Of a stretch of DNA of 64,000 bases, positions 1,226-48,139 are shown piece after piece. The stretch's first letter is position 1. Each line of letters starts with the position of its first letter. The position numbers were made by a program, and so were the translations under genes. The stretch comes from Kudoa neothunni. Taxonomy: Eukaryota; Animalia; Cnidaria. The stretch lies in NCBI GenBank assembly GCA_964304625.1, contig OZ199839.1, positions 3,195,223-3,259,222 on the forward strand, read 5' to 3'. The notes beneath the pieces are model-generated. The model saw only the letters and a program-made list of their open reading frames with translations, did not search any database and was not told the DNA's origin.

Positions 1226-4200
1226 ATATACATATGGAGGATTAGCAGACGCATGAATTATACTTGTTGCATTTATAATGGGAACAATTACCATCAATAA
1301 TCGTTTGGGAAGGAAATACACCTCATTTTACTTGGAGGCTAATGGATGAGGATTTTTCGAATGCCGAGGATTCCTTACTATTGGAAAAAACATTTAAATG
1401 TTAGGATTTTAGTTATTTGTTTTTCTGTTAGAACATTTTATTTTAATGAATTTAATAAATTAAGGTACTCACTATATAATAAATCCTATTTTTCATTAAA
1501 TATTGCCACGTTTGATAGGAAATAATTCTTTTAATTTTTTATTAATCAAAGTATAAAATTAGCAATAAATTATTTATATATTTGATGCTATTTTTAAAAA
1601 GAATAAATTGGATTATTATACCATAATTTTTATGAATTTTGGGATTGATCTTATGGTTTTCATTTAGTTAAAGAGGATCCAGTAATCCTGTTTGAGGAGA
1701 GAGATATACATAAGCAAGGTCAATACACGGTTGTGTTAAAAATGCAAGCTGATGAAACTAACAAAGAATTCCTCAAATCAAAGATTCTAATAGGGGGACA
1801 GAATATTGTTGACGACTGTTATATTATAGACAATCCTATATACAATGACCTTTTACGTTTTTGGATAAAATCCGATTGTTTGGTCGAAGAAACTTCAATA
1901 ATAAAATATTCAATCGGAAAAGAAATTTCTTCAAGAATAAAAAAAGCACGTATAGACTTTTATAATATATTTAAACTACTTATTAAATTCTATATAGGGA
2001 TCTATAACGCTTACGGGCGGGTAAAAATTGCTCACGACCATATTATATTATATATCATACTCTCCCACTCACTTAATACTATCCACTTAATAAATATTAG
2101 AGCGAATAGTTTGTTCTCAAAGAGCGTGATATTCGAAAAAAATGTTGACAATGTTATCACATGTACTAATTATGTGTGTAAGTATAAATGTGAGGTAACC
2201 GACTCAGGAATATCATTTGACAATACTTTAATAAGAGTATCATCAGAAAAACTAAACGATATAGAAATATATCACCGAACAAGTAAATGAATTATTATAA
2301 TTTAAATTTTACCATTTATTTAGATTTTAACGAGGTATTTTATTACCAAAATGCTAAATTTATGGATGATCATGGTATAAAACTGTATTTGGATGGCTAC
2401 ACGGTTCTACCAGATTCGCATATAATCTTAAACAATGATTCCAGGATAATTGTTCCTTACCAGATTCCTGTCGAATTTATTGATCAAAAGTTTCAATGTT
2501 TGATTTCAGAGAGCAAGATTGTGAATGGAAAAAACTATTTATTTCCAGAATCTACTGTAATCATACCTCTAGGAATGAGTGGAAGTATTTTTATATAATA
2601 ATACAATATTATATGCGACTTAAAAATGTTAGTCACAAAAAAATATATCAAATTTTTCTACTTTCATTGATTTTTAATTATAACTATGAATTTTTTTATT
2701 ATTTATAGAGAGATATAGCTATGAATTGGAATATCTATGGCTCGACCAAAAACTATGTATTCTGCTGAAAATATCTTCCAAAAGAGAAATACCCACGTTA
2801 GATATCAAATATTCAATTCATGCGAATAATGAAATTCTAACTGAACCATATGTCAATCAAATCACTGTTACGCCTGAAGATAGTGAATGCTCCTTTGAGA
2901 TTGAAGGACTCGATACTGGGGTTAATTACTCGATAGAGTTATCCTCTCCCCAGCTTGAAGATTATGATCCATATATTATAAAAAATGGTACCAAAAATAC
3001 TTCCTGCTATAAAAACCAATTTAAGAATCTTCATTATAATTAATATATATTTTAGAAGCGTGTGACTTTGAAGTTACAACGCAACGTGAATCAAATGATG
3101 AAATTTTAATAGCAATAAGGAAAAAATCAAATTCTGGAACTTTAGAAATTTCCTATAGACTTTTTGAATCAGACTCTGATAATAAAGAAGCTCTTAATGA
3201 ACAAAATAAGCAGATAACCTGCACTGAACACATATGCAGTTTCAAAACACGTCCTATAACTCCCGCCAAAAATCACAATATCGTTCTAAAAATTCCGCCA
3301 TGCAATGATGATTTTAATTTAGTCATTCAAAAAGGTATTATAGAATGTTTTTTTCCGACAAACTATTTAACCTATTATTAGTCAAAAGTGATTATGGTTT
3401 CTATTACAGTTATAGAAAAGATGACGATTTAAGGGTCACAATTGTTATAGAATTAAGACTAAACCTGACATATGAAGTTATTATGGTTAACTGGAGTCTC
3501 AAGAAAAGTAAAGATTCATCAATAATTAAAAATTCAATAAAGACTTTACAAATATCGAAAGAACATGGGTGTTTTAAATTTGAAATACAAGGGGTAGAAC
3601 GTAATAACCCATATGATATCGATATTACGTCTGAAGATCTCGTGAAAAAAACCAACCAAGTATACATCCCAACATGTAAAATTTTTTAAAACTAAATGTT
3701 AATATTATTACCGACCACTTGAAATATTTAGTAAAAACCGATTATGAACAAAGAGTGGAATGGGTTAATACTCAAATATCAATTATTTTGAGTTTTGAGG
3801 AATCTGTTGGAGCTTGTAGCGCGGAAATTGAATGCATAACATTAGAAAAAATAGAAGAACAATTTATTGAAACAAATACTCAATTGTTTCACGTTGATTT
3901 CAACTGCGCTGAAAATGTTTGCGAAACTATGTTAAATGGAATAGACAGAAATTCTTATCATAGAATTAAAGTGGATTCTAATTTGATAAAAACTAAAGAA
4001 TCAGTTTTAATTGGCAAAGGTATTTACTCTAATTACATAAAAATTAAAATATATGCTATAGGTATAAGTATATTCCAAATCGAATATGAATACGATAAAG
4101 ATAATGCCATTATTATCAATTATACATTAGAAGAAGATTTTGATGAAATTTTGTTGAAATGGGATTTACATGATACTCAAGGCAACCAGGTGAAGAGTTC

Positions 4201-5158
4201 GAACGAAGCAATAGAACAGATATCGTGTAATGAGAAATTATGCCAAATGACAACGTTGGGACAACTGGATCACTCTAAAGCTTATCAATTTACGTTCGAG
4301 TCTGCTGAATTAAGTGGTACGAATGTGTTGAGAATAGAAAGTAATTACCTTATGTCATTTCAATAGATAAGTAAAAATAATTATGGTTTATTATTTTCAA
4401 TGAGTATACCCTCTGAAATTAATTTCATCCTTTCTAAAATCGGAAATTTTATGTTACTTTCCTGATAGATAAATATGTCTGGTTTAAAAATATTTATTAT
4501 TAAAAATTATAAACGACGTAAAAAATCTAATCCAACGAGAATTTTTATTATTCTGTCAATTATCTCCTTATTAATACATTGTTAATTTGTATAATTTTTC
4601 AAAACACTAAAAATTGATAAATATTTTTAAAACAAATTTTAACGATGATCCATTTTAGATATATTATGTAAATTCGTATTTTACTAATACAGTCGCTATA
4701 AGTACAGAAAATATTTTTATTATTTATATACCACAAAACAGGGGTGCACAAATTCCGGCCTCAATGAGGTTTTTAGTGGCCCGCGATCAACTCTAATTAA
4801 GTTCAAATTAATGGTATAGGTGGCCTGTTCAAAAATCATAGAGATTTTTTAAATATACAAAAAATATCCATAATCATAATCAACACACCTTTTCCAGCGA
4901 TTTTTCCAATTTTGGAAACATTAAGAAAAGTCTGTTTTATTTCAGTAATCGATGAAAATCTTCTCCCTTTTAAATGAAAATTTATCTTTGGGGACAAAAA
5001 AGTCACAAGGTGCCGAATCTGGAGAGTATGGTGGATTCTGGAGTTGATCAATATCAAAGTTAAATAAAAATCGTTGAATCTTAGTGGATGTATCAGCAGG
5101 CGTGTTATCGTAATGTAGAATCCAATTACCGTTGTTCCACATTTCAGGTCTCTTTCGG
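1226..5158 (+). repeat. Segmental duplication block 1, copy A (paralogue at 38253-42148)
   Basis: Collinear match at an offset of ~37.0 kb, from atatacatatggag to inside the mariner. Confidence 0.95.
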
Positions 5159-8100
5159 CGAATGGCGTATCTAAGGCGACGGAGAACATTTAGATAATAC
5201 TCACTGATTACTGTGCGGCTTTCAGGTGCATATTCATAATGTAGAATTCCCATAACGTCCAAAAATACGGTTAGTTAAACCTTAATTTTACTTTTAACTT
5301 GTCGCGTTTTTCTCGGTCGTGGGGATGATAGGGCCTTTCACTCGGATGATTGGATGATTGCAACTTGGTTTCTGGGCCATAGCCGTGCACCCACATCACA
5401 TCGCCGTTAATGATAGAAGACATTGATTTATCACATTCTGATACTCTTTGGAAGTGATTCCTTGAAATTTCATCACGCTTTTCTTGCTGTACTTTCGTAA
5501 GCAAACGCGGAACAAACTTGGCCGCAATTCTTCCCATTCCAGAATCATCCGTTAAAATTGCGTAATATGATCCAAATGAAATTCCCGTTTCATCGCTAAT
5601 TTCTCTTATGGTTAATCTTCTATCTGAATTAATTAAATTTTTTACAATTTTAATGAATTCAGTATTTTTGCTCGATAAGGGTTTACCATTGCGATCGTCA
5701 CTTTCAACAGATATTCTCCCCTGTTTAATTCGTCGATATCACTCATAAACTCTCGATCGACTTGTTTAAAAATGTCTCTTAAATCATATCATATGTTTCC
5801 ATACTAGTTTTTCCAAGTTTAACGCAAAACTTTATACATATCAGCTGTTCATGATTCTCAGACATTTGGTCGCGCGACATCGACTTGGATCATATCTTAC
5901 AAAATGTGTTAGAATTCTTTCAATTTTCTATCAATTTTTGTCTGATGCATAAATAATACTTATGAATATATTTTATATAGGTTTTTCTAATTTTAATATA
6001 GTTTAAACACATTTAATACATGATATTTTTTGAACAGACCACGTATTTCTAAATGAAATGAAAAAAGCATTCGATCATTTAATTTCAGTTGGTTTATGTA
6101 AATATTGAATATATCGATAACACCTAATAAAATTAATAAAAAATTTTATGTAAGATTTTGTTATGTGCGAAATATTAATAAAACTAACTCTATAGTTACA
6201 ATGATAATTTAAAAAATTGTTTTTAACCGTCGAAGGGCCGAGTGTCGAAAAATTCAGTACGTACCCATGGGGGTGGTTTTTGACCCCATCATTATTTTCT
6301 TATTTTATTTCGCAATTTACCCCAAAAGTTATTCTTGTAATTATTACTCATAACACAGCTATATTAACTACTTAGAGGTTTACTTTAGGTGGTATAAAGT
6401 TGAAAAAAATGTAACTAATTCTTCGATTAAATATTATAAACATCTGCATCAAAACGTTTGTTATTATACGGTTCAAGTATATGACTTATTGTATTTACAT
6501 TATTGAAAGTTTCTGGAAGTAAAATAACGGCGTTTAATCAAATATAGATAAGAAACGCACACAAGGGATCATACAAGATACCAGGCATGATTTCCGGGAA
6601 AAGTTGTTAATCACAAACCTGAATGCGGGGTTAAGTGTGGAACGTCGTTGTAAATATTCGGGTATGTTTATACCTTCAAAATAAACGAATCAAATATGAA
6701 AAATTCACAACAGACTTAATTAAATACAAATTACATTAATTCCGAGGTTTCCCAAAGAGAGAGTAATTTTTTCAGAGATAACATCAATCAGATTCTAAAC
6801 TACACGTCTGGCAATAAACAAAATCATTTTGAATTTGTGAAACGAACAAATAAGTTTCTTGTAGTTATAGAAACGTATATTAGTTTTTCAGTCAATATTT
6901 CGTAAACAAAACACACATCAGGATCATTCCCGTGGACCAGTTATTTCAGTGAATTAGGCTATTCACCAATATTAATACATTTATTAAATAGTTCTTAACT
7001 ATATTTTGAATGCGAATGATAATGAACCTTGAAAGTCTGGAGCAAATATTCACAGATAAGCTATGATGCCCCGCCCCTCCCCTCCCCTAAGTAGGCACAC
7101 GTACACTGACTGTAGTTTAGCCTCAAATTATTGTTGTCGTTATCAAAATGCATTTCCAAATATAAATTCCTTCTTAAATTAATCATCTAAAATTAAGCAG
7201 TATAATTCGTTTATTCCTAACGTTTAAAACACATGCAGCTGATAAATAATAATTTAATCCCATGGCGTCATCGTAATCCTTCGACAGGAAAAAGGAAAAC
7301 AACAAAATATTTACGTTAGAGAATATTCATGAGATTACAAACTTGGATTATGGTCATTTTCGCGATGACCTTGAATATACAATAAAACAATGCAAAATCT
7401 GTGTCTTATGAAGAGATATTCAAAATGTTTTTGTGGCGGTCAAATGTTTTTAGTTAAGAGAAAAGACGCTGATGATGGTTATCAATACAAATGTATTTCA
7501 TGCAACAAAAAAACGTCGATACGAAAAGGAACTATTTTCGAAATTTCTCGACTTCCTTTGTGGAAAATTTTTATTTTTATAGCAACGGTAATCCAACAAT
7601 GACGTACGATGATATTCGTAAACACACTAAAATTTCTTCAAACTCCACCATAAATAATTGGAAAAATGTCATTACGGATTTTATGGCATCTAAACTAGAT
7701 GAGGAATTTTCTAAAATAGGCGGAAAGGGTGTTGTAGTACAAATAGATAAGACCGCCATATCAAAAAGGAAGTCCAACGTTGGAAGAATTCTTCGGAATA
7801 GACGAAGACGGAAATTTCTTTTTGAAAATAACACAAAAAAGAAATAGGGATATTCTAGAAAGAATAATTGTTGAGAATGTAGAGGAAGAGTCAACTATTT
7901 GGACCGATGGTTGGAAAGGTTACAATAGTTTAAAGGATCTAGGTTTTGTTCACGGTACCGTGATCCATAAAAGAAGGTTTGTTTCCATTGGGGGGGGGGG
8001 GGGGGTCCACACTAACAAAATAGAAGCTACATGGGGGGCTTTTAAAAGAAAATATAGAAGCGCCACAAATAAAACCCCAGAAACACTTCCCAACTATGTT

Positions 8101-11100
8101 GTTGATTTCATGTTTCGAAGAAAATATAGTGGAAAAGAATTATCGACTTTATTTAAATATATAATGGTTTTAAGTAGTAAAAATTTATTTTTCCGACATT
8201 TTACGAGGTGTTTCATTTTTTTCCCCGTTTAGATGCACGGTCACTGTAATTTAGCCGGAAAACCTCCAATTAGAGCATTTCTCGAACGTTTAATATATAT
8301 TAATTGTAACAATTTTTCGTTGTTTATTTTTTGATAATTTTAATATGAAGTTGATACAAGAAGTATGGGGACGTATGGAGGACATACGTTCAAATTTACA
8401 ACCAATTTTTCTAGGATAAATCCTAATATGTTTACAAAATTCGAATTTATAAAATGTAGGAATATATTTCCTAAGATTAGGTGGATTTAATACGAAAATA
8501 TATGAGGTTGTCATTTTTAAAACAAGATTGACCGAAAATGGGATCACGAGAGACTCCGCTTGTTCCCGGGAGGATTAAAATAGACCAAGCATAGGACATT
8601 AATTTTTTATAATTAATAAATATCTTATGAAAATTAATGTCTAATAGTTTAAAATGCTTTTTGCAAAGTTTATATTTTAAACCTGAGTAATTTTTTTGAA
8701 ATTATGTTCTTAAAAATTAAATGTAAGAAGATATTTTACATAATGAAAAATAAAATTTAAGTATATTATGTATTTCTTCCGAGCATCAATGAAATATGCT
8801 GAAAAATCATCGCTGACCCATTTTCCTTCATCTATTTTTGTGTATAACAAAATACGACTACTCTTAACAAATTTAATTAGTAACATACATTCAATTGCTT
8901 TTACTAAAGTAATAGTTTATTATGTTTAAAATTATTTTTTATTTCATTATTTGTAGTTTTATTCAATGCAATATATTATTACATTTATTAATCAATCAAT
9001 CCCTCTTTCTAAGTTATATGTTCGAATTTGTATATATCTAACAATGTCATTTGGTTAAGCATAATCTGATACCACATTATTTTCATCTTCAGCATTTATC
9101 TAATTCGAAATTTCTCGTACATAAATATTGAATTAAGTTAATTAGAGTTATCTTATTATTTTTTAAATAATCATAATTTTTTTAGCTGCTCAAGTTTTCA
9201 TAGTAACGCCGTGTTGTAATGGAAATATTTTCACTTTATTTGAATTAGGGATTTTCCATACTTTTTTTTCGTCGACCCTCTGAGTAGGTAATTTACCTAG
9301 CCATCGATCCCCTCCAGAGATTTTATTAATAATATGTGCAATACATTTCATTAATATTCTATTTCCGATATATAATAAAGTGAAAAATTATACTAACCCC
9401 AAAAAACATTCATTAACGATGTTACATCAAAATATATCAGAAAAATTTTAGATATTTATAATCAAGTCATGGCAGAAAAACAATTATATTCGAAAATTTA
9501 CCATAATGAATTTGTTTTTCATCATAAATCATATTCAATTCACCTCCCAAGTTAAGCTTCCTGTATATGATTATACATATCTAATTTTGTACAAATATGA
9601 GATCAACGGAAGATTTTGAGGTTAAATTACATCATATATAGAGAAAATAATATTTATTCGTGGCTGCATTTAAAAGTTAATAATAATAATAATATCTTAA
9701 TCTTAACTTAACTTAACTTAACTTAAGATAGTGTTCTGTACCTTGAGGTGACTTGAAGAATTTTCAAAGTGCTAACAGGGGTTGAACAACAATTGGAGAT
9801 TGTTATAATTATTTTAGTAGTTTTTGTAATTTTTGTTCAAATCAATTTTGAAAATAAGATTTATCCATCCTAGTCAATTATAAACTTAATGTAAACCATC
9901 GTTATTGTTTTATATACTGTTGATATCAATCAATATTAATGATAATGTATTTGCTAGCATTTTATGAGCTGCAAAGTCTTTAATTAAATGAAAAATATTG
10001 AATTACATAATTAGGAAAGGTGGAGATTGATATTAACCCTCTAAAGGTTTTGGGGTATACTCTACCCCAAAACGATTTTTACATCGCAATATCTCATTGT
10101 TTTATGCATGAAACCTTTTTAAATTTTTAATATTCTTAAAAAAAATAATTTTAGTAAATTTTAAGTTAAAAATTTTTCAATTGATTAAATATTAAAGTTT
10201 CTACACAAAAATTATCTTCCAAAGTTTTGGGGGTAAAAAATACCCCAACCATTTTTTTGCTAAAATTGAGGGAAAATTGTGTATATATATAAATAATCAC
10301 ATTTAAGTGATATTGTATGAGTAGTTATGGAAATAATCCAAGTATATTGCGCGTTTATTCAAAAGGCACATGCTCAAACCTTCACAAGCACTGTCATGAG
10401 CGATGGCGTTGACTTTAGTGACGATATTTCTTCATCCGGAAGTAAATTTGAAGATTATGTTATGGATGGATATGAATTAACGGATGATGAGATTGAAGTT
10501 AACGATGTTCATCCTGATTCCTTGCGCAGAAAAAATGGTATTTCATGGAGCATTTCGAAGCCTACAATAACCAAAACATGTACGGAAAATATAATGGATT
10601 CTACTCCAGGATCTACTTGTTACACAACTCTAAAATTAAAAAATTTTTGGGACTGTTTTACAATTTTCTTTACCGCGGAAATTTGTAATAAAATTATACA
10701 CTTCACAAATATTTTTGGAAAACATAAATTCAAAGATGACTGGTGTGACGTAGATGATATCGAATTTCAGGGTTATTTAGGTCTTCTCATACTAATGGGA
10801 ACTCATAAAGATAGACAAGAACCCATATGCGAGCTTTTTAGTATTAAAGAAGGGAAAGAAATATACCGGCAGTTGTTTTCTCTTCGACGATTCAAGCAGA
10901 TTTCGCGTACCCTTCATTTTGATGACTTCAATATCAGAATGCAGCAAAGGGATGTCGATAAATTTTGTCCCATAATTGATTTATGGGATCATTGGGTTAA
11001 GATATTGTCTAAATGTTTCGCTCTACATCAAGATGTAACTGTCGATGAGCAACTTGTTTCATTTCGAGGTCGATGCCCATTTCGTCAATGTATGCCTATG

Positions 11101-14100
11101 AAGCAAGCAAAATACAGCATCAAATTATGTTCTCAACGTTTCCATATATCTTGGCAAAAGTAGTTTTGAAGCTCTGCGACAGTGTAACGTTGGAGAAAGT
11201 AGTGCTCTTTCATTGTCATCCCCATTGTTCTATTCCGGCAGAAATATCGTAGCTGATAATTTCTTTTCATCATATTGACCTTCTTGGGAACTCTACGAAA
11301 AAACAAAAAAGAAATTCCAAATTATCTGTGTCCCTCAAAAAAAGTGAAATTTATAGGAGCAAATTGGTGTTTAACGAAAAGTTCATGTTGGTATCATACG
11401 TATGTCAGAAAGCCAAATATGTTATCTTGTTGGCTATTGGTACATCGGACAATACTATTTCGAATGAGACATTAAAGTTCAAGCCTAAAATAATGCTGGA
11501 CTACAATAAATCTAAAGGTGGTGTGGACAATGTCGATAGGATGTTGGCTTCTGTTTCTGTTCGCTGATTCACAAGAAGAAGGCCTTTAGTAGTGTTCTTC
11601 AACATGATGGATTTATCTTTAGTCAACGCCTTTGCAATATATAAAGATGTATTTAACGATGCGAAGAAGACTAGAAGCTCTTTTTTTAAAGAAATTGCAG
11701 AGAAGCTTTATAGTCCATTGCTGATGCGAAATTCATCAGAAAAGATCATTAAGAGGAAATCACCAATTCTTCCATTGATTAACAAAGTTTCACCTATTGA
11801 TGTAAAGCTTTCAAGATGTGAATATTGTGAGCGAAACAAGGACAAGAAAACTACAAAATGGCGCAAAATTTGCTATAAATTTTATTGCCCTACGCATGCC
11901 TCAAATACTTGTTGGAAATGTTATGAATAAAAATATATTTTTAATTTATATTATTTTGTTTCATTATAAAGGGTGAAACTTTTTTAATCCTGACAATAAA
12001 ACACAAACTTATGTTAAAAAATACGATCGAATGTTTACGATGAGTGTCGTACAAGTACGATTTGAACTAGTTTGGGATTAAATTACAATATTAATGTTTA
12101 TTTTAAGTTAATAAATTAAATAAAATAACTGGGATATTTTTTACCCTAAAGACTTTACACGTACATTGTTTATTTGATCCTTAGAAGGTTAAAAATACTC
12201 AACTTTACTGGAGCAATATAACGAAATTATCTTCACTTAATTCTCGAATCTAGCTCTATATGACACATAAGATTAACTAACCTCAAATTTTTATTTATCT
12301 ACGTCTTATCATATATAGAAGTGGATATGGTAGTGTATATAGAGTGGTGCGGATTTCATTTTCTCGTCAAAAGGAGGAGCAAGTCCGATTTGAATTGGGA
12401 TGCGGTGTTCTATATGCTCCAATGTATAATTAAAATCATTTCTTTTTAATTTATCTCAAATTGATAAATAACTTTTTTTATTTCTATTATGAACCTGGAT
12501 TGTTAATTTTAAAATTATGAATTAAGTAAATAACGCGTTTTTAATGAAACATAAGGTCGCGGGATTAAGAATCATTAATTTTTTGGAAGCAAATTAAAAC
12601 AATAAAATTTACTATTCCCCAATTTTTTAAATAAAAATATTAATGCTTTTAAAATATTAATTTCATCTGAGTGAAGTGGATTTTTCATACATTGAAATTA
12701 AATTTTAACGCAACCCCTAGTTAACTGGGAGGCAATTTTAAAGGATTCGAAAGAATTGGATACCAAAATGGAATTACAAACTGATGAACCATTGGTATGA
12801 TTAACTGAAATTCTCAGGATTTGAATAATGGGGAAATTTAGAATACAGAGTTGTTTATAAAAGCTTGGGATGTGGTTGTGTATCAAAAAAATGAAACTAG
12901 TAATTATATCATAAATACATATTATTGCTTATTTAAAAATTAAGCGACGAAAGATATTCCCGAAACTCAACCTACCACAGAAGAAGATGACACGTAATTA
13001 ACTTTTCGGAATATATTTTTGAATGTTAACTTTGAAGGTTTTTAAAACAAATCAATCTACTCGATAAAAACATCATGAATGTTGGTGATAATCAAGATGT
13101 GCAAACAGTTAATATAAAAATGAAGACATTCACTTCGACCCAAGCATCGGAATCGTTATATTTTTCAAAACCGTTAGATGACAAGGATATAATGGATATT
13201 GTTGAAAATTCGGAAGAAATAGACAAACCCAAAGAGGCTCTGCAATCTACCTATGTGAGCCTAGACTTTTCTGCAACCGATTCCTCAACGGAAAAGGAAT
13301 CTGCAAGCAAAATTGTGCTAGCTGTGACTAAAAACAAACAAATAAGTACCCAAGTCGAAAAGTCAAATGTTATTGCGGGTGATGTGCTCGTGGTTAAAAT
13401 ATCAAACAGCTTAAGCAAAAAGTTAAATATAACATTCAGCCAAATTGTAAAAGTGGATCCTAACAGGAGGAATTTCAGATGTTGCACCTTACATAGTATA
13501 ATCAATAAATATTCATTAAATAAATAATTTATATTTATAGGTAAAAAACTCACTTGGGAGACAAGTTATTGCTCCATATTGAGAGAGGTTACCTTGTCGA
13601 AGACACTTACAAATTACACATGTACGTGCAACCACACAACGAGCTATGCAATTATTTTCGATGTTTTCGATCAGGATTCCTCTGAAAATAAATATTACCA
13701 ACACGAAATATCATTAATATTAACATTGATTTCCCTACTTTTCCTCGTCATTACAATAATTTGTATTTTGACGTCAAAGTAATTTGAAAAATATTCTTTA
13801 TATGGATCGATTTAAATATTTTGTTGACAGAAATATTTTCAAAATGAGATCATTGGCCCAATTGTGGATGTGTGTCTCTATCTTCATGTTTCATCTTTCA
13901 TTTATCTTTGGGAATATATTCAACAATGTTCAAAGTTCTTGTTTTAATGTTGCAGTTTTTCTACATTATGCCCTTATGAGTCAATACTTTTCTTTATTTT
14001 TAAATTCGTTCTTACTGTTTAAAAATCTTGTCCTCACGATGAAAAAAATAAGCTCAATAATTATGAATATAATTGCCTTTTTGATTATAGGTAAAAATTT

Positions 14101-17323: not shown

Positions 17324-17699
17324 ATTAAAATCTTGCTTATCTATATTAGTAGAATTTAAAATTATTAGAATTTTTTTATACGCTTAGTTTCCACAAAATA
17401 TATTCGATAGATATATTTTTTATTAATTTTCCTGGCACAATATTAATAAAAATGTGCATACGATAATATCAACTTTAAATTTTTAATAACTAAATCATAT
17501 AAAATAATTTTGAATTTATTTTTTTGAATTTTATTTTAAATTAACAATTTTGCTATAATTATGATGTTTATTTTATTTCAATATGCGCAAAAATTAATAT
17601 ACCGAAAAGCGCCGCTAACCATAAATTTTAATTATAAATTTTCTTTTATACAAATAATTCATCCAATGAAACCATTGAATAATTAGAACTGACGGGAAA

Positions 17700-19071: not shown

Positions 19072-19194
19072 GGAGACTATTGACACCGTAAAATTTAATC
19101 CTAAACGACATGTACGCACGCTACATAATGATTTAATTTCTAAGAACCTGCTATATTTAATACCTGGACATTATTTACGGTGCCAATAGTCACT
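19072..19194. mobile_element. ~120-bp MITE upstream of the adhesion GPCR B start
   Basis: Inverted repeats gactattgacaccgtaaa / tttacggtgccaatagtc. The terminus resembles that of the MULE at 25413. Confidence 0.6.
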
Positions 19195-37700: not shown

Positions 37701-40700
37701 TTGTCGAAGCATGACCAAAAAGTTTTTCTCCGTATTGATTTGTAAATTTGGAAATCAATTTGTGCATATCTTGATTATATAACACCTTGAAAATATCATC
37801 CGCTTCTATGCCATTTTGAGATATGTAAGGAGAAATTCCTCGGCGATTATTTATTATATTTTCAACTGCCCCCAGCACTCTATTTTTATCAATTAATGAG
37901 TCTAATGGCACATTAGTGGTATAATCTTCATTATTTGATGATGGTATATCATCAAATAAGAAATCATCAATAGAAGAATCAGTATCAGAACAACTACCTC
38001 AGCAGTCAGAAGAACTTATTACGTTTTGCGCGTGCGCGTTGAATTAATTGAATAAATTTTGTCAATATGAGGGTTATTTAACGATTAGAACTATCTAAAA
38101 AATTCCAGTTATGTTACTTACTTTATTAATAACAATTTTAGCAAATAAACCTTAGGGTGTATAATCACCCAAATTTTACTCGGAGGCTGTTTTAGCATTA
38201 TCTTAGGTCATAATAAAAAAAAATTTTATTTTATTTTCGCTTATTGTGTACTATATACATATGGAGAATTAGCAGACACATGAATTATATTTGTTGCATT
38301 TATAATGAGAACAATTACCATCAATAATCGTTCGGGAAGGAAATACACCCCATTTTACTTGGAGGCTAATGGATGAGGATTGTACGAATGCCGAGGGTTC
38401 CGTATTATTGGAAAAACCATTTAAATGTTAGAACTTTAGTTATTTGTTGTTCTGTTAGAACATTTTATTTTAATGAATCTAATAAACTAAGGTATTCACG
38501 ATATAATAAATCCTATTTTTCATTAAATGTTGCCACGTTTGATAGGAAATAATTCTTTTAATCTATTATCAATCAAAGTATAAAATTGGCGATAAATTGT
38601 TTGTATATTGGATGCTATTTTTAAAAAGAATAATTTAGAGGAATATTCCATAATTTTTATGAATTTTGGGATTGATCTTATGGTTTTCATTTAGTTAAAG
38701 AGGATCCAGTAATCCTGTTTGAGGAAAGAGATATACATAAGCAAGGTCAATACACGGTTGTGTTAAAAATGCAAGCTGATGAAACTAACAAAGAATTCCT
38801 CAAATCAAATATTCTAATACGGGGACAGAATATTGTTGACGACTGTTATATTATAGACAATCCTATATACAATGACTTTTTACGTTTTTGGATAAAATCC
38901 GATTGTTTGGTCGAAGAAACTTCAATAATAGAATATTCAATCGGAAATGGAATTTATTCGAAAATAAAAAAAAAACGTATATAATATTTATAATATATTT
39001 ACTATATTAATTAAATTTTATTTAGGATACCATAACGCTTACGGACGAGTAGAAGTTGATGGCAACAATATCAAATTCTATATCATACTCTCCAGTTATC
39101 TCGATTCTATCCGATTAAAAAATATTATAGCGTATAATTTATTTTTGAAGCAGACGATATTAAACATTAATGAAGGAGGTTTTATCATATGTAGAAGTTT
39201 AGTGTGTAAGTACAATTATCGAGCAACTGGCCTCGAAACATCACTTGAACATACTTTAATAAGAATATCTTCAGATGAACTAAAAGATATAGAAATATAT
39301 CACCGAACAAGTAAATGAGTTATTATAATTACAATTTTACCATTTATTTAGATTTTAACGAAGCATTTTATTACCAAAATGCTAAATTTATGGATGATCA
39401 TGGTATAAAACTGTATTTGGATGGCTACACGGTTCTACCAGATTCGCATATAATCTTAAACAATGATTCCAGTATAATTGTTCCTTACCAGATTCCTGTC
39501 AAATTTATTGATCAAAAGTTTTATTGTGTGGTTAATCATGATGCGACTGGAAGTGGAAAAAGCTTTACATTTCCAAAATCGACTATAACGAAACCTCTAA
39601 TAACGAATGAAAGTATTTTTATATTATAACACAATATTATACGCGATTTTAAAAATGTTACACAATTAAAAAAATATATCAATTTTTTCTACTTCATTGA
39701 TTTTTAACTATAACTACAAATTTTTTTATTATTTATAGAGAGGTATAGCTATGAATTGGAATATTTTTGGCTCAACCAAAAACTAAGTATTCTGTTGAAA
39801 ATAGCTTCCAAAAAAGAAATACCCACGTTAGATATCAAATATTCAATTTATGCGAATAATGAAATTCCAATTGAACCATATGTCAATCAAATCACTGTTA
39901 CGCCTGGAAATAGTGAATACACCTTTAAGATTGAAGGTCTCGATACTCGGGTTAATTACTTGATAGAGTTGTCCTCTCCCCAACTTGAAGATTCTGATCC
40001 ATACATTATAAAAAATGGTACAAAAAATACCTCCTGATATAAACACCAATTTGTAAATCTTCATTAAATTAATATATATTTTAGAAGCGTGTGACTTTGA
40101 AGTTACAACGCAACGTGAATCAAATGATGAAATTTTAATAGCAATAAGGAAAAAATCAAATTCTGGAAATTTAGAAATTTCCTATAGACTTTTTGAATCA
40201 GACTCTGATAATAAAGAAGCTCTTAATGAACAAAATAAGCAGATAACCTGCACTGAACACATATGCAGTTTCAAAACACGTCCTATAACTCCCGCCAAAA
40301 ATCACAATATCGTTCTAAAAATTCCGCCATGCAATGATGATTTTAATTTAGTCATTCAAAAAGGTATTATAGAATGTGTTTTCCAAAAAAAACATTTAAC
40401 CTATTATTAGTCAAAAGTGATTATGTTTTCTATTACAGTTATAGAAAAGATGGCGACTTAAGGGTCACACTTGTTATAGAATTAAGACTAAACCTGCCAT
40501 ATGAAATTATTATGGTTAACTGGAGTCTTAAGAAAAGTGAAGATTCACCAATAATAAAAAATTCAATAAAAGATCTACAAATATCGAAAGAATATGGGTA
40601 TTTTAAATTTGAAATACAAGGGGTAGAACGTAATAACCCATATTATATCGATATTACGTCTGAAGATCTCGTGGAAAAAACCAACCAAGTATACATCCCA

Positions 40701-43700
40701 ACATGTAAAATTTTTTAAAACTAAATGTTAATATTATAACCGACCACTTGAAATATTTAGTAAAAACCGATTATGAACAAAGAGTGGAATGGGTTAATAC
40801 TCAAATATCAATTATTTTGAGTTTTGAGGAATCTGTTGGAGCTTGTAGCGCGGAAGTTGAATGCATAACATTAGAAAAAATAGAAGAACAATTTATTGAA
40901 ACAAATACTCAATTGTTTCACGTTGATTTCAAGTGTGTTGAAACTGTTTGCAAAATTATGTTAGATGGAATAGACAGAAATGCTTATCACAGAATTAAAA
41001 TGGATTCTAATATATTAAAAGATAAAGGACCAGTTTTAATTGGCAAAGGTATTTACTCTAATTACATAAAAATTAAAATATATGCTATAGGTATAAGTAT
41101 ATTCCAAATCGAATATGAATACGATAAAGATAATGCCATTATTATCAATTATACATTAGAAGAAGATTTTGATGAAATTTTGTTGAAATGGGATTTACAT
41201 GATACTCAAGGCAACCAGGTGAAGAGTTCGAACGAAGCATTAGAACAGATATCGTGTAAAGAGAAATTATGCCAAATGACAACGTTGAGACAACTGGATC
41301 ACTCTAAAGCTTATCAATTTACGTTCGAGTCTGCTCAGTTAAGTGGTAAGAATGTGTTGACAATAGAAAGTAATTACCTTATGTCTATTCAATGAGTATA
41401 CCCTCTGAAATTAATTTCATCCTTTCTAAGATCGGAAATTTTATGTTACTTTCCTGATGGGTGAATATTTCTGGTTTAAATATATTTATTATTAAAAATT
41501 ATAAACGACGTAAAAAATTTAATCCAACGAGAATTTTTATTATTCTGTCAATTATATCCTTATTAATACCTTGTTAATTTGTATAATTTTTCAAAACATT
41601 AAAAATTGAGAAATATTTTTAAAACAAATTTTAACGATGATCCATTTTAGAATATTATGTAAATTCGTCTTTTACTAATACAGTCTCTCTACGTACAGCA
41701 AATATTTTTATTATTTATATACCACAAAACAGGGGCGCACAAATTCCGGCCTCAATGAGGTTTTTAGTGGTCCGCGATCAACTCTAATTAAGTTCAAATT
41801 AATGGTATACGTGTCCTGTTCAAAAAGTATCGAGATTTTTTAAATATACAAAAAATATCCATAATCATAATCAACACACCTTTTTGACGATTTTTCCAAT
41901 TTTGGAAACATTAAGAAAAGTCTGTTTTATTTCAGTAATCGATGAAAATCTTCTCCCTTTTAAATAAAAATTTATCTTTGGGGACAAATAAGTCACAGGG
42001 CGCCGAATCTGGAGAGTATGGTGGATTCTGGAGTTGATCAATATCAAAGTTAAATAAAAATCGTTGAATCTTAGTGGATGTATCAGCAGGCGTGTTATCG
42101 TAATGTAGAATCCAATTACCGTTGTTCCACATTTCAGGTCTCTATCGCCGTAATTTTTTTCACGTTTTAAAACATTTTTTCTCTTCAAATGATGAATTTA
42201 AATGATAAAACTAAACCGTAATCCTTTATCAATAATTCTACTAACAGAAAAATTACGAGGAACTGAAAATAATTTAATAACACCATTTTTCAGCTCTGGC
42301 TTATAAACTCAAACTAGATTGATAATATTCTTTAACTTTTCGTTTGATTTTAACTATTCTAGGTTTAATAAATTAATAAATTACGCGTTGACATATTAAT
42401 TTAGAAACGAAAAGTTTTTAAATTAAGTTATTTCAGAGAGTATGCTCAAAATATAATTTCATACGTTCTCTTAAATAATTCATTATAATCTATTATAATG
42501 TTCGAATATATTATCTCAAATTATTAATTCATTTTTCAATCATTTATAGAAAGACATAGCTATGCATTTAAATATTTTTGGAACAACAACATACTGAATG
42601 TTCGGGTGAAAGTATCTTCTGATGGAGAAATACACTCTTTAACCATCAAATACACAATTTATGGAAACAATCAAACTCCAAATGAGCTACAAAGCAGTAA
42701 CATCAATGTTGAATGTAAAAACAATGAATGCGCCTTCGAGGTGGAAAATCTGGACTTTGAGATAGATCACACGATAAAGTTGTTTTCTATGCGACTTGAA
42801 GATAACGTTCCACACAGTATAAAGAACGGTAATCAAATAATTTTAAAAAATAAAATCAATATTTGATAATGAAACTAATATATATTTAGCTTGTGAATCT
42901 AAGGTCACACAAACACGTGAATCCAATCATGATGTTACAATAAATATAAAGAAAGATCCAAATGTTGTAGATTTAAGAGCAAGCTATTCAGTTACGGAAG
43001 TAGGATCTGGGGATAAAGAAATTATCGCAGAACAAAATAAACAGATAATCTGCATTGAAAATGAATGTAATTTCAAAACACCCCCTATAACCCCTACCAA
43101 AAACTTTAATATTGTTCTAACATTACCGCCATGCAGTAGAAAGTTTAATTTGGTCGTTTCACAAGGTATTATCGAATTTTTCTTTCAACAAAGAATTTAA
43201 TATATTTTTAGTCAATAGTGAATATACTCTCACTTACGATTATATAAAAGAAACCGACTCAACAGTTAAAATTGTGGTAGAATTAAAACTAAACATACCA
43301 TATGAAATTATTAGGACCAATTGGAGTTTAAAAAGCAATGGAGGTTCGGAAACAATAAAGAATTTAGTAGAAACTCTAAAAATAATTAAAGAAAAGAAAC
43401 TGTTTATATTTGAAATACAAAATGTAAAGCGTAATAACCGTTATGATATCGAAATTAGGTCCAATGACCTAGTAGAAAAAACCAGCCAAATTGTCATCCC
43501 ACAGTGTAAACATTTTTTAACAAAATGTTAATGGTATTACTGATTATTTTATATATTTAGTAATAAGCAATTATCAAATATCCATGACATGGGTTAATGC
43601 TCAAGTTTCAATCACTTTAGTCTTTGAAGAAGCTGTGGAAAGGTGTAGAACAAAAATTGAGAGCAAAACAGTGGAAAAAACATCAAGAAAAGTTTCTGAT

Positions 43701-46700
43701 ACTAACGTAGAGTTGTTTGATGTTGAGTTTAATTGTGCCGACAAAGTTTGCAAAACTTCGTTAGAAGGGTTAGACAGATATGTTGATCACAGCATTAAAG
43801 TGGTGTCTGGTCTATTTAAAGATCCAGATCCAGTTCTCGTTGAAGGAGGTATTTATTCGACTGGTTTCAATAATAAAATGAACGTTTTAGACTCGTGCGC
43901 ATTCCAAATCGAATATAAACACAATGAAGATAAGATCACAAGGGTTATTTTTAAATTAGAAGAAGAATTTGATAAAATTTTGTTGAAATGGTATTTACTT
44001 GATACTCAAGACAAGCAGGTGAAGAGTTCGAACGACATATTTGAACAGATATCGTGTGATAATAAAGTATGCCAAATGGAGACCTTGGGAGAGCTGGACC
44101 AATTTAAAAATTATAAATTCATGTACGAATCTTTTCAACTAACTGGTGAGAGAATGTTGAAGATAGAAGGTAATAAACTTAAACCACTTCAATAGATGAG
44201 TTAAGAATAACTATTATTTATTATTATCGATTATGAATTCAATTAATAATTGATTTCATCCATCCTTATATCAAAAATATGAATACTCCTTGATTGATAC
44301 TTAATTATGGCTGTTATTATATGTATTACTAACTTCACTCACCAACTTGCATTTATATTGTTTTGTCTATTTGGTCTTCATTAATAAATTTTTAATTTTC
44401 ATTAATTTTCAATTCACATAAAACTGAGAAATATTTTAAATTAAATCCATATTCTATTACTAAAATATCTATGTGGACATTAAATATTTTTATTAAATAT
44501 GTTTTCTAAGTGGAATGACGATGATGTTTGTACGTAATTTTGTTGATGGTCCCAGGGGTTTACGTATTATCTATCGGTCACTTACTGTATTTTATCTTAT
44601 TTTCAATATATTAATTTAATCGTTCAAATCTATATAGTATATGAAGATTACAAACTTTTTAAAATGTAATCACGTTACTTAAAACTTTTAAAAATCGTCT
44701 TGGCGAATTACATTTAAATTATTGATTAATTAAATTTAATAGGTTTAAAAATTGAGTCCAATAACAGAGATTTAGGTAAAATATAATAATTCCGCATTCT
44801 ATCTCTAGGATTTGTCAAATCCGTCATTTTGAAGTTCTTTAAAATACTCCCAGCTGATACCATATCTAAAAATGGAACTAAACATGTTTAAATATTTAAA
44901 AAAATAGTGAATAAGGATCACTTACATCAAATTCGAATCTTTTAGCTGGTTTCGAGTTAATTTTCCCACGATTTTAAAGGTTAATTAATTTTCAAAATTT
45001 CATTTTATTGTCCTTTGTTCAAAAATATTTATATTACTTATTTCAATTCGGAAAAATTTTTCGTTCATTAAAAATGCAATGGTTCAGAAAGATAACCACG
45101 TCATGCTTTAAAAGCGTAAGTTGCTCTTAGTACAGTACCTCATCTTCGAAGTCATTGTTAGTTTAAACCTCATTTTATTTTTGAACGATTTGTTTAGTAA
45201 TTGTAAGATTTTTTGAATTTGTCGAAAGAAAGTGATTAATGTTTCTTTATTTTAAATTCTCTATAATTAAAAAATTCCAGTAATGTTTTAGGATCGTCAA
45301 TTATTTGTAATGATCTATTACTTTAATATCACCTAGGCCTATTTCTGTACTGGTTTCTGGTGTTGTGTCGAGTACCAAAAGTTAATTGAGCTCAACGATT
45401 GTACGGCAGCATTTTCCATCTGGGAGTGAAAATTAAGGATTTGGAGGGGATAGATTGGATCATGACTGGAAATAATTTTTGAGAAATTTTTATAAATTGT
45501 TGATTTTTCAATATGTAGATGAAAAAACCTTAATGTATACATCGTTTTTTTCTTAGTTGAATTAATGCTCATTTTTCCTTTTAATATGATGCAGGAATAT
45601 TTTACGATACGCGTTTAATTCAAAATATTGATGAATTAAATTTTTATTTGATTAACTTAGAAATGATCCTAATATTTAAACGTTAAAAAGTAAAAAATAA
45701 AAAGATAATTTATTTTGTAAACAAATTTAAAAATACTCAAATTTTTATTTATCTACGTCTTATCATATATAGAAGTGGATATGGTAGTGTATATAGAGGG
45801 GTGCGGATTTCATTTTCTCGTCAAAAGGAGGAGCAAGTCCGATTTGAATTGGGATGCGGTGTTCTATATGCTCCAATGTATAATTAAAATCATTTCTTTT
45901 TAATTTATCTCAAATTGATAAATAACTTTTTTTATTTCTATTATGAACCTGGATTGTTAATTTTAAAATTATGAATTAAGTAAATAACGCGTTTTTAATG
46001 AAACATAAGGTCGCGGGATTAAGAATCATTAATTTTTTGGAAGCAAATTAAAACAATAAAATTTACTATTCCCCAATTTTTTAAATAAAAATATTAATGC
46101 TTTTAAAATATTAATTTCATCTGAGTGAAGTGGATTTTTCATACATTGAAATTAAATTTTAACGCAACCCCTAGTTAACTGGGAGGCAATTTTAAAGGAT
46201 TCGAAAGAATTGGATACCAAAATGGAATTACAAACTGATGAACCATTGGTATGATTAACTGAAATTCTCAGGATTTGAATAATGGGGAAATTTAGAATAC
46301 AGAGTTGTTTATAAAAGCTTGGGATGTGGTTGTGTATCAAAAAAATGAAACTAGTAATTATATCATAAATACATATTATTGCTTATTTAAAAATTAAGCG
46401 ACGAAAGATATTCCCGAAACTCAACCTACCACAGAAGAAGATGACACGTAATTAACTTTTCGAAATATATTTTTGAATGTTAACTTTGAAGGTTTTTAAA
46501 ACAAATCAATCTACTCGATAAAAACATCATGAATGTTGGTGATAATCAAGATGTGCAAACAGTTAATATAAAAATGAAGACATTCACTTCGACCCAAGCA
46601 TCGGAATCGTTATATTTTTCAAAACCGTTAGATGACAAGGATATAATGGATATTGTTGAAAATTCGGAAGAAATAGACAAACCCAAAGAGACTCTGCAAT

Positions 46701-48139
46701 CTACCTATGTAAGCTTAGATTTTTCTGCAACCGATTCCTCAGCGGAAAAAGAATCTGCAAGCAAAATTGTGCTAGCTGTGACTAAAAACAAACAAATAAG
46801 TACCCAAGTCGAAAAGTCAAATGTTATTGCGGGTGATGTGCTCGTGGTTAAAATATCAAACAGCTTAAGCAAAAAGTTAAATATAACATTCAGCCAAATT
46901 GTAAAAGTGGATCCTAACAGGAGGAATTTCAGATGTTGCACCTTACATAGTATAATCAATAAATATTCATTAAATAAATAATTTATATTTATAGGTAAAA
47001 AGCTCACTTGGGAGACAAGTTATTGCTCCATATTGAGAGAGGTTACCTTGTCGAATACACTTACAAATTACACATGTACGTGTAACCACACAACGAGCTA
47101 TGCAATTATTTTCGATGTTTTCGATCAGGATTCCTCTGCAAATAAATATTATCAACACGAAGTATCGTTAATATTAACATTGATTTCCCTACTTTTCCTC
47201 GTCATTACAATAATTTGTATTTTGACGTCAAAGTAATTTGAAAAATATTCTTTATATGGATCGATTTAAATATTTTGTTGACAGAAATATTTTCAAAATG
47301 AGATCATTGGCCCAATTGTGGATGTGTGTCTCTATCTTCATGTTTCATCTTTCATTTATCTTTGGGAATATATTCAACAATGTTCAAAGTTCTTGTTTTA
47401 ATGTTGCAGTTTTTCTACATTATGCCCTTATGAGTCAATACTTTTCTTTATTTTTAAATTCGTTCTTACTGTTTAAAAATCTTGTCCTCACGATGAAAAA
47501 AATAAGCTCAATAATTATGAATATAATTGCCTTTTTGATTATAGGTAAAAATTTATATTTATGTAATTTTGTAATGTTGTTATAGGGATTCCTCTGGCCA
47601 TCGTAATGCTCTGCTGGAAATTTTATCGCAAATTTTACGTAAAAGATAAACAGTATTTTTTTTTCGTGATAACTAAACAATTTTTATCTGAACTATATTA
47701 TAGTTGTATACCGCATGGGCCCTTAAAACTGGCAACAATAACTATTCCTGGTGCGGCGATATTATTTTTCAATTTGATAGTATTTGCGCTCGTTTTGAAG
47801 ACGATATTCAGATCCGAATGCACAAAAAAGAAGAAAACCTCTATAAAACAGCGTGCAAAACAATTAATGTTCTTGTTTACTTTGCTAGGTCTTCCTATGC
47901 TTCTTCAATTGTTGTCTTCGTTTGTTAAGAGTGATTTTATTATATTGGTTTCCAATATGATAAACACTTCGATTGGAATTATCTTATTTTTCATTCTTAT
48001 CGTTGGCAACAATGAGATGAGAAAGCATATTGCCTCATCATTCAGATCACGAACCACCACCAAAAAGTATCTAATGTCAAGTAGCAACCAAAAATCCGGC
48101 ACAAGAATGATGTCATTTTCAACAAAAAATGTTTCATGA
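19734..48139 (+). CDS. Giant multi-exon adhesion GPCR, copy B: signal peptide, ~30 FN3/Ig-like ~95-aa modules, GAIN/GPS, 7TM
   Basis: ATG at 19734 gives signal peptide MLLFSLVTTLVIFVP|DIYA after splicing out 19780-19838. Exon clusters at ~19839-22303, 27526-29316, 32577-33524, 38695-41370, 42550-44169 and 45773-48139 join in frame through GT-AG introns, and every long intron between clusters is phase 1. The gene ends in a GPS motif (WETSYC...CTCNHTTSYAIIF) and seven hydrophobic helices, with TGA at 48139. Joining all clusters into one transcript is inferred from phase compatibility and a single signal peptide/single 7TM. Confidence 0.72.
22521..23639 (-). mobile_element. Internally deleted hAT transposon
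   Basis: TIRs taggggttaaga(t)cggtt, degenerate 8-bp TSD ttgattgc/ttggttac, and minus-strand NVRPTSIDADRC resembling the hAT dimerisation motif PxTSxxxERxFS. Confidence 0.75.
23765..24759 (+). mobile_element. Non-autonomous Helitron
   Basis: Starts a|TCcattatatatataaaac and ends with subterminal GC hairpin cccgtacgaagctggg plus CTAA|t. Confidence 0.65.
24971..25000 (-). mobile_element. Helitron 3' terminus on the minus strand
   Basis: Reverse complement reads cctggcaaagctgagaattagcgCTAG|t, the same terminal architecture as the other Helitron ends. Confidence 0.45.
25408..27271 (-). mobile_element. Decayed Mutator-like (MULE) element with nested SINE
   Basis: Imperfect ~70-80 bp TIRs (25408-25480 vs 27200-27271). 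Minus ORF 26096-26302 has W....FGSNTNNRTEQEHDKIK, matching the MULE TNNxxExxH catalytic-E region. Confidence 0.7.
26422..26894 (-). mobile_element. tRNA-derived SINE, copy 1
   Basis: Minus-strand head has a Pol III A box (TAGCACATCGG) and B box (GTTCGAATCC), with an A-rich tail. Homologous to 36321-36766 and 59469-59780. Confidence 0.85.
29953..31069 (-). mobile_element. piggyBac deletion derivative
   Basis: TTAA-ccctcccg ... cgggagga-TTAA ends, with a decayed acidic N-terminal transposase-like frame on the minus strand (~30160-30650). Confidence 0.7.
35830..38250 (-). mobile_element. Decayed piggyBac transposase relic
   Basis: Minus-strand fragments LDEQFVAFRDRCEFKRYMPMKPTKYG, GRNVFCYNFFTS, GTMRENKRDIP and YNTIKWGVDT. 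Ends not resolved. Confidence 0.85.
36321..36766 (-). mobile_element. tRNA-derived SINE, copy 2 (inserted in a piggyBac relic)
   Basis: Same family. 13-bp TSD actttttc(t/c)caat at 36308-36320 and 36767-36779. Confidence 0.88.
38253..42148 (+). repeat. Segmental duplication block 1, copy B
   Basis: Matches 1226-5158 and ends in a truncated mariner. Confidence 0.95.
41807..42148 (-). mobile_element. Truncated copy of the same mariner (3' end only)
   Basis: One TIR plus PPYSPDSAPCD. Same insertion site as 4817, so the insertion predates the duplication. Confidence 0.9.

What the first reader, a model, noticed from the sequence alone, without database searches (positions are those of the whole stretch)
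1668..48139. Tandem array of variant receptors: near-constant signalling module, variable ectodomain
Two head-to-tail paralogues share an almost identical GAIN/7TM but differ in ectodomain module number and in specific modules. A conserved signalling end with a diversified recognition end resembles variable immune, allorecognition or antigenic-variation receptor families. If more copies flank the window, this would be a diversified adhesion-GPCR repertoire (inference).
Basis: partly seen in the sequence, partly recalled or inferred. Interest (0 to 1): 0.85.

Follow-up and report, generated by a model that had tools for sequence, protein, structure and literature searches.

The report
Mosaic giant adhesion receptors in Kudoa
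A tiny tuna-muscle parasite carries about 15 genes for giant cell-surface receptors; the two neighbouring copies here keep overwriting each other's DNA yet leave a few middle building blocks different, a previously undescribed way this parasite may vary what it shows to, or senses in, its host.

Summary
The genome matches the myxozoan fish parasite Kudoa neothunni. The window holds gene B whole (19734-48139; 35 exons, open 3,222-aa frame) and the 3' half of gene A, which starts 14.3 kb upstream. Both encode adhesion GPCRs: signal peptide, about 24-29 one-exon beta-sandwich (FN3/Ig-like) modules, GAIN/GPS and 7TM. The tandem is real: no gap, a unique spacer, and Illumina contigs cross both spacer ends. 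The distal 810 residues differ at one position, fewer than the 7TM. Variation sits in mid-ectodomain patches (one exon 72% identical) between identical tracts of up to 4.4 kb: patchy gene conversion. Omega is 1.34 in the ectodomain and 0.30 in GAIN/7TM; a second tandem pair shows no such contrast. The family has 15 loci; a five-exon cassette occurs in 1-3 copies, and one paralogue has ten tandem copies of one exon. A has a one-base frameshift in the assembly (error or pseudogene, untested). Expression and antigenic switching are untested. The scan noted this family before at another locus of this genome. New variant of a known kind.

The parts
1668..2584 (+). Gene A exons M17 (1668-1949), M18 (1998-2282, hypervariable) and M19 (2324-2584); its first 16 exons lie upstream of the window from G000:C2:3180917
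   Evidence: AG/GT ends, phase 1-1, open; 95.7%, 72.3% and 86-88% nt identity to B
2709..4340 (+). Gene A single five-exon cassette a-e (one ~93-aa beta-sandwich module per exon)
   Evidence: 92-99.6% nt identity to B cassette 1; 66-75% to B cassette 2
4839..5738 (-). Tc1/mariner transposase remnant in the long intron of A; its 3' end is also present, truncated, in B (41874-42150)
   Evidence: Pfam Transposase_1 E=2.6e-9
7375..8229 (+). Merlin/ISXO2-like transposase remnant in the intron of A
   Evidence: DDE_Tnp_IS1595 E=5e-15
10321..11927 (+). piggyBac-like transposase remnant in the intron of A
   Evidence: DDE_Tnp_1_7 E=3.9e-30
12945..14690 (+). Gene A linker, GAIN, GPS-TM1 and 7TM exons (6 exons), stop at 14688-14690
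   Evidence: 94-100% nt identity to B, splice sites intact
14691..17322 (.). 3' flank shared by A and B (B copy 48140-50778), includes a 2,088-bp substitution-free tract
17323..19261 (.). Unique 1.9-kb spacer between the two repeat units; no assembly gap
   Evidence: short-read contigs 17258-18075 and 18307-19304 cross its two ends with 0 differences
19734..22303 (+). Gene B signal-peptide exon (19734-19779) and distal modules M1-M8; 19881-22456 is identical to gene A
   Evidence: (one 2,576-bp contig, 19881-22456, 0 differences); same exons in chromosome-1 paralogues
27526..29316 (+). Gene B exons M9a-M13; M10 (27844-28125) is a variable module (87% nt, 25 of 93 aa differ from A); the A counterpart of M12 (28675-28966) has one extra base in an A run
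32577..33524 (+). Gene B exons M14-M16; end of the 4,358-bp substitution-free tract 28477-32834
37465..37998 (-). piggyBac-like remnant in a B intron interior that has no counterpart in A
   Evidence: DDE_Tnp_1_7 E=1.7e-11
38695..39612 (+). Gene B exons M17, M18 (39026-39310, hypervariable) and M19
39739..41369 (+). Gene B five-exon cassette 1 (a1-e1); exon e1 (41091-41369) folds as an Ig/FN3-like beta sandwich
   Evidence: pLDDT 90.5; Z 7-8 to FN3 and other Ig-like domains
42550..44169 (+). Gene B five-exon cassette 2 (a2-e2), absent from A, open and with intact splice sites
   Evidence: 67-75% nt identity to cassette 1
46399..46949 (+). Gene B linker exon and putative GAIN core exon (46492-46949)
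   Evidence: 55-70% aa identity in paralogues; 33% to a relative in another organism; fold not confirmed
46995..47232 (+). Gene B GPS motif (invariant C-x-C-N-H-T|T-S-Y-A-I) and TM1
   Evidence: Pfam GPS 25.8 bits, above the 22.5 cut-off
47285..48139 (+). Gene B TM2-TM7 and short cytoplasmic tail (3 exons), stop at 48137-48139
   Evidence: (7tm_2 in 8 of 8 paralogues, best E=0.0054; best PDB hits are adhesion GPCRs)

Best explanation
A and B are true tandem paralogues of a Kudoa-expanded family (15 loci) of giant adhesion GPCRs. Each has a signal peptide, a rod of about 24-29 beta-sandwich modules, most encoded by one phase-1 exon, a compact GAIN/GPS and a 7TM. The family diversifies in two ways. 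(1) Non-allelic gene conversion between neighbours overwrites kilobase tracts and leaves patches unconverted, so the genes are mosaics; the patches that stay different fall mainly on the same mid-ectodomain modules and change amino acids at the neutral rate or faster. (2) Duplication and loss of symmetric exons or of a five-exon cassette changes rod length without breaking the frame. Shown: gene structure, tandem arrangement, mosaic divergence, omega contrast in this pair, module-number variation, fold of one module type. Inferred from adhesion-GPCR biology: cleavage at the GPS, binding of host matrix or cell surfaces (or of other parasite cells) by the rod, and tethered-agonist signalling under pull. 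Inferred and weakest: host antibody or ligand pressure keeps the middle modules different.
For: Open 9,669-nt model with GT-AG introns and consistent phases; the same exon ends in two chromosome-1 paralogues and the same layout in another organism (L030). GPS above cut-off and invariant; 7TM hits to adhesion GPCRs. Module fold; weak mutual similarity of many modules. Substitution-free tracts of 4,358, 2,576 and 2,088 bp against a permutation maximum of 606, or 1,882 with the most divergent block left out; three long-intron interiors share no homology. The 2,576-bp tract is reproduced exactly, ends included, by short-read contigs. Neighbours are each other's closest relatives, 100/100 support. 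Omega 1.34 (0.95-1.89) vs 0.30 (0.16-0.56), p=1.3e-4. Exons variable within a pair also tend to be most diverged between clusters (Spearman 0.57, p=0.005). Cassette number 1, 2 or 3 per gene and ten e-type exons in one gene.
Against: No RNA evidence for splicing or expression (one search lists no RNA holder). Ectodomain omega is not significantly above 1, and the chromosome-1 pair shows no ectodomain/7TM contrast (0.67 vs 0.63). The exons that vary in A/B are not those that vary in the chromosome-1 pair (Spearman 0.17, p=0.44). The GAIN fold could not be modelled (pLDDT 30) and 7TM hits are weak. A carries a one-base frameshift in the assembly, and other copies show frameshifts. One assembly from one infected fish cannot separate conversion between paralogues from recombination among old alleles.
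Confidence: 0.65

Rival explanations
1. Two old, recombining alleles of one highly polymorphic locus were placed in tandem by a recent unequal crossover; the mosaic arose by allelic recombination under balancing selection, not by conversion between paralogues.
For: Long identical tracts next to deeply diverged patches are also the pattern of balanced alleles; the 3' flank and a 3.3-kb intron are nearly identical.
Against: Three intron interiors and both outer flanks are non-homologous, not insertion versus empty site. The same tract-and-patch pattern recurs in the independent chromosome-1 pair.
Confidence: 0.15
2. Neutral birth-and-death: conversion and exon duplication are by-products of a repeat-rich, fast-evolving genome; the middle modules are spacers under relaxed constraint and A may be a young pseudogene. 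There is no selected variant repertoire.
For: Ectodomain omega is compatible with 1; A has a frameshift in exon M12 and three transposon remnants in one intron; the copies at C2:6.08, 11.72 and 11.76 Mb look broken in the assembly.
Against: All ten e-type exons of C1b and both cassettes of B keep open frames, splice sites and invariant Cys/Trp at 40-60% identity; between-cluster omega is about 0.5 in the ectodomain; A has no stop codons despite 48 changes in one exon; the frameshift is a one-base change in a homopolymer inside an otherwise identical 4.4-kb tract, as expected of a low-coverage HiFi error.
Confidence: 0.17
3. Assembly artefact: A and B are two haplotypes of one gene mis-joined in tandem, or the identical tracts were homogenised by read correction.
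For: The assembly came from about 7x HiFi coverage with haplotypic duplication purged (PMC12239612); a probable false duplication (5.5 kb, 99.7%, across a 200-N gap) exists in the chromosome-1 cluster.
Against: No gap in the window. Short-read contigs from the same fish cross both ends of the unique spacer with 0 differences, reproduce the identical tract and branch at 22456; contigs on shared tracts are about twice as deep as those on the spacer, a weak sign. The flanks on both sides are unrelated.
Confidence: 0.03

Closest known systems
Adhesion GPCRs (class B2: ADGRL/latrophilins, ADGRG6, ADGRD1, ADGRF1, ADGRE, CELSR, ADGRV1)
   Same: Long modular ectodomain, GPS with H-x-T cleavage motif followed by a Stachel-like segment, secretin-type 7TM; best sequence hits are these receptors. 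Lineage-specific adhesion-GPCR sets are known in early-branching animals (PMC4302439).
   Different: The rod is made of about 24-29 modules with no Pfam or database sequence match; the region between rod and GPS is only about 170 aa, shorter than a full GAIN (own knowledge: about 300 aa); tandem copies exchange sequence and vary in module number. No paper found describes it in myxozoans.
Plasmodium falciparum DBLMSP/DBLMSP2 (PMC10919680)
   Same: Two paralogous surface-protein genes of a parasite with shared and private sequence produced by non-allelic gene conversion.
   Different: Unrelated proteins; there conversion is shown across thousands of isolates and confined to one domain, here it is inferred from one assembly and covers most of the gene, introns and flank included.
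Hydractinia Alr allorecognition family (PMC9546547)
   Same: Cnidarian clustered family of genes and pseudogenes, one Ig-like or FN3-like domain per exon, folds found only by structure prediction.
   Different: Alr proteins are single-pass with one to three Ig domains and ITAM/ITIM tails; these are 7TM receptors with more than 20 modules. No homology was tested or claimed.
Antigenic-variation families (trypanosome VSG, Plasmodium var/rifin, Giardia VSP)
   Same: Multicopy surface proteins of a parasite, mosaic formation by conversion, constant membrane-proximal part.
   Different: Only 15 loci, most not near chromosome ends; signalling receptors rather than coat proteins; no evidence of one-at-a-time expression or switching.

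Membership tests
Adhesion GPCR | GPS motif with conserved Cys pairs, Trp and H-x-T/S cleavage triad directly before TM1 | tested here: met
   Pfam GPS 25.8 bits (cut-off 22.5); invariant in 8 copies; aligns to ADGRD1 and ADGRL3
Adhesion GPCR | Seven-helix secretin/adhesion-type membrane domain | tested here: met
   7tm_2 in 8 of 8 members (best E=0.0054, below the curated cut-off, one exon only); best PDB hits ADGRE1 and ADGRF1 (E=0.028, 0.0098); six hydrophobic segments above threshold, TM3 placed by homology. Weak but consistent.
Adhesion GPCR | Complete GAIN fold (helical subdomain A plus beta-sandwich subdomain B) | tested here: inconclusive
   No Pfam GAIN hit, no PDB or atlas match; model of the single exon failed, pLDDT 30. 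The exon is conserved in all paralogues and sits where a GAIN is expected. The joined domain was not folded.
Adhesion GPCR | Long N-terminal ectodomain of adhesion-type modules behind a signal peptide | tested here: met
   hydrophobic 15-aa first exon in B, A, C1a, C1b (no signal-peptide predictor run); e-type module is an Ig/FN3-like sandwich; no clear membrane helix before the GPS
Adhesion GPCR | Autoproteolysis and G-protein coupling through a tethered agonist | not testable with these tools
   Motif present only
Fibronectin type III superfamily (modules) | Seven-stranded FN3 topology and FN3 sequence signature | tested here: inconclusive
   Model is a beta sandwich; many FN3 hits at Z 7-7.8, tied with other Ig-like folds (top Z 8.0); Foldseek E above 0.001; no Pfam fn3 hit. 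Works like FN3/Ig; membership not shown. Only the e type was folded.
Concertedly evolving tandem pair (non-allelic gene conversion) | Tracts of identity far longer than chance, bounded by old divergence, between physical neighbours | tested here: met
Concertedly evolving tandem pair (non-allelic gene conversion) | Tracts seen moving between copies across isolates | not testable with these tools
   One assembly and one sample only
Antigenic-variation system (VSG/var/VSP type) | Mutually exclusive expression with switching | not testable with these tools
   No RNA run holds the stretch
Antigenic-variation system (VSG/var/VSP type) | Large archive of dozens to thousands of variant genes | tested here: not met
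   15 GPS-TM1 loci found (a lower bound)
Antigenic-variation system (VSG/var/VSP type) | Diversifying selection on exposed domains | tested here: inconclusive
   Omega 1.34, interval 0.95-1.89; 0.67 in the second pair
Hydractinia Alr-type allorecognition proteins | Single-pass protein with 1-3 Ig domains and a signalling tail | tested here: not met
   7TM and more than 20 modules

The most novel reading that the evidence does not exclude
The family is a true variant-receptor system: copies are expressed one or a few at a time, or the ten tandem e-type exons of the chromosome-1 copy are spliced alternatively in Dscam fashion, while conversion reshuffles hypervariable modules under host immune pressure. 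It would be an antigenic-variation-like or self-recognition repertoire built on a GPCR, in an animal parasite.
Probability: 0.12. Interest if true: 0.9.

Novelty: new variant of a known kind. Interest (0 to 1): 0.6.

Why it matters
K. neothunni has only about 5,300 predicted genes (PMC12239612), yet devotes 15 loci of roughly 20-40 kb to giant adhesion GPCRs with unannotated ectodomains. How myxozoans attach to, sense and persist in fish tissue is largely unknown, and no paper found mentions this family. It gives named candidate surface receptors, specific variable modules (M10, M14, M18, M19) and a testable diversification mechanism. For adhesion-GPCR biology it adds a case where ectodomain length is varied by exon and cassette copy number among close paralogues.

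Tried and rejected
Sphaerospora molnari as source: rejected (40.17 Mb in 40 contigs); K. neothunni fits (40.2 Mb, N50 12.0 Mb, three chromosomes plus mitochondrion); no marker gene was checked. A hidden third close copy suggested by variant contigs in run X4: rejected, 20 of 20 variant letters are those of paralogue C1b and the assembly holds nothing between 79% and 100%. Import of the divergent patches from the chromosome-1 genes: not supported, A and B share sites with them about equally. Upstream exon blocks as separate secreted genes: disfavoured, no stop or second signal exon, and phases run through in four copies. Word-indexed homologue searches with the e-module alignment and with P0001 found nothing new; atlas searches were uninformative; the GAIN exon model failed. 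The omega fit did not converge and was replaced. The bacterial promoter scan is not applicable.
Full report
Source. The window is G000:C2:3195223-3259222 of a 40,260,978-bp assembly in 4 pieces, about 29% GC, with 40-60-nt introns. Chromosome 2 is 12,040,071 bp. This matches Kudoa neothunni, a myxozoan from yellowfin tuna: 40.2 Mb, N50 12.0 Mb, three chromosomes plus mitochondrion, built from about 7x HiFi reads and purged of haplotypic duplication (PMC12239612). The identification rests on these statistics.

Gene structure. Gene B runs from 19734 to 48139: 35 exons, all introns GT-AG, phases consistent, one open frame of 3,222 aa. It has a 15-aa hydrophobic first exon, 25 exons of 85-99 codons that are nearly all phase 1-1, one 274-codon exon (perhaps three modules, not tested), one module split in two exons, then a linker, a 152-aa conserved exon, GPS-TM1 and three more 7TM exons. 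The same exon ends occur in two paralogues on chromosome 1 at 54-86% identity, which supports the model; there is no RNA confirmation. Gene A has 30 exons and begins 14.3 kb before the window. It lacks the second five-exon cassette and would be about 2,750 aa. In the assembly it has one extra base in an A run in exon M12. That base lies in an otherwise identical 4.4-kb tract, and similar one-base differences occur between two overlapping copies of one stretch on chromosome 1, so a sequencing error is plausible; it was not tested.

Protein identity. The GPS passes the Pfam cut-off and is invariant in eight copies, with an H-T|T cleavage triad and a Stachel-like segment. 7TM exons hit adhesion GPCRs weakly but consistently, and the profile search of 1.8 billion proteins returned ADGRG-like proteins after one close relative. 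The e-type module folds confidently (pLDDT 90.5) as a beta sandwich with Z 7-8 to FN3 and other Ig-like domains; this is a common fold and does not prove FN3 membership. Several other modules resemble it weakly. The GAIN fold is unconfirmed. The joined protein was not searched or folded; all searches were exon by exon.

Is the tandem real? Yes. The window has no gap. The repeat units (about 34 kb) are separated by a unique 1.9-kb spacer, and their outer flanks are unrelated. Short-read contigs of the same fish cross both ends of the spacer without differences (17258-18075; 18307-19304), though none spans it whole, and A-type letters are present. Contigs on shared tracts are about twice as deep as on the spacer, which is only a weak sign. 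A probable false duplication in this assembly looks different: 5.5 kb, 99.7%, across an N gap.

Pattern of divergence. A and B are a mosaic. Substitution-free tracts of 4,358, 2,576 and 2,088 bp, covering exons, introns and flank, far exceed permutation maxima. The 2,576-bp tract is reproduced by one contig with the same ends. Between them lie patches: M10 87%, M18 72%, M19 86-88%, a1 92%, c1 and d1 94%, last 7TM exon 94%. Short introns in the main patch also diverge (80-93%), and three long introns have unrelated interiors. This fits an older duplication with repeated conversion. The distal 810 codons differ at one residue, GAIN+7TM at 17 of 496. So the outer end is not the variable end. Omega with exon-specific distances is 1.34 (0.95-1.89) for ectodomain exons and 0.30 (0.16-0.56) for GAIN/7TM, p=1.3e-4. 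The ectodomain value is not significantly above 1.

The family. Fifteen GPS-TM1 loci exist: this pair, a pair at C1:15.96-16.00 Mb, four at C2:11.69-11.83, four at C2:10.37-10.53, and singles at C2:6.08, C2:9.60 and C1:2.53. Neighbours group together in the tree of the nine closest. The chromosome-1 pair is also mosaic, but there the 7TM-region exons are more diverged (84-96%) than most ectodomain exons (96-100%), apart from M1, M2, M9 and M14, and omega does not differ between parts. A constant signalling end is therefore not a family rule. Exons variable within a pair tend to be those most diverged between clusters. Module number varies: d-e exon pairs number 1, 2 or 3 per gene, and one chromosome-1 copy has ten tandem e-type exons, all open, 279-282 nt, phase 1-1, 40-60% identical to e1. 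A 19.5%-GC contig from run SRR31175926 has the same modules, GAIN exon, GPS and 7TM at 33-44% identity, so the architecture is not confined to this assembly; its organism is unknown.

Mechanism. Most likely these are adhesion and force sensors: the rod binds host matrix, host cells or other parasite cells, and the cleaved GPS releases a tethered agonist (inferred from adhesion-GPCR biology). Symmetric exons let the rod grow or shrink in frame; conversion keeps neighbours alike while some middle modules stay different, through relaxed constraint or host pressure. The data do not separate these two.

Comparison and novelty. It is filed as an adhesion GPCR (GPS and 7TM met, GAIN fold inconclusive). 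It works like the DBLMSP/DBLMSP2 pair in its conversion pattern (PMC10919680) and recalls the Hydractinia Alr cluster (PMC9546547), but is a member of neither, and fails the large-archive test for antigenic-variation systems. Paper searches found no description in myxozoans. Other first-stage readers noted the same gene and the C2:10.4-10.5 Mb cluster; my model was built before I saw them. Verdict: real, new variant of a known kind, interest 0.6.

Noticed in passing
L010:9442 to L012:7411 (G000:C1:15959442-15977411, minus strand): Ten tandem copies of the e-type exon in one paralogue, all open with intact phase 1-1 splice sites, 40-60% identical to e1; either a longer rod or alternatively spliced exons.
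   Followed up: partly
L016-L017 (G000:C1 about 16016000-16027200): 5.5-kb 99.7% duplicate across a 200-N gap: probable false duplication; the two copies differ by a one-base indel in an exon.
   Followed up: partly
L019-L021 (G000:C2:6080233-6100800, minus strand): Paralogue with several frameshifts and stops in ectodomain, GAIN and 7TM exons: probable pseudogene or poor consensus.
   Followed up: partly
L006, L007, L009: One-base frameshifts in GPS/7TM or ectodomain exons of copies in the C2:11.69-11.83 Mb cluster; error or decay not resolved.
   Followed up: no
L030:1-3402: Same receptor architecture in a 19.5%-GC contig of run SRR31175926, organism unknown, probably another myxozoan.
   Followed up: partly
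window:4700-5160 and 41700-42150: The end of a mariner element is shared by A and B at the same intron position, and B breaks off there just before its second cassette; the element may mark the point where the cassette was lost or gained.
   Followed up: no
window:26417-26906, 36321-36772, 59462-59775: Three copies (82-93%) of a roughly 300-490-bp dispersed repeat, the third inverted; two lie in introns of gene B.
   Followed up: no
window:52042-52229 and 53331-53518: 188-bp inverted repeat pair (80%) of a family that recurs downstream of the window; probably a small non-autonomous transposon.
   Followed up: no
window:54725-57519: Several minus-strand exon-sized open frames without Pfam match; another reader noted an integrin alpha near 51304.
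   Followed up: no
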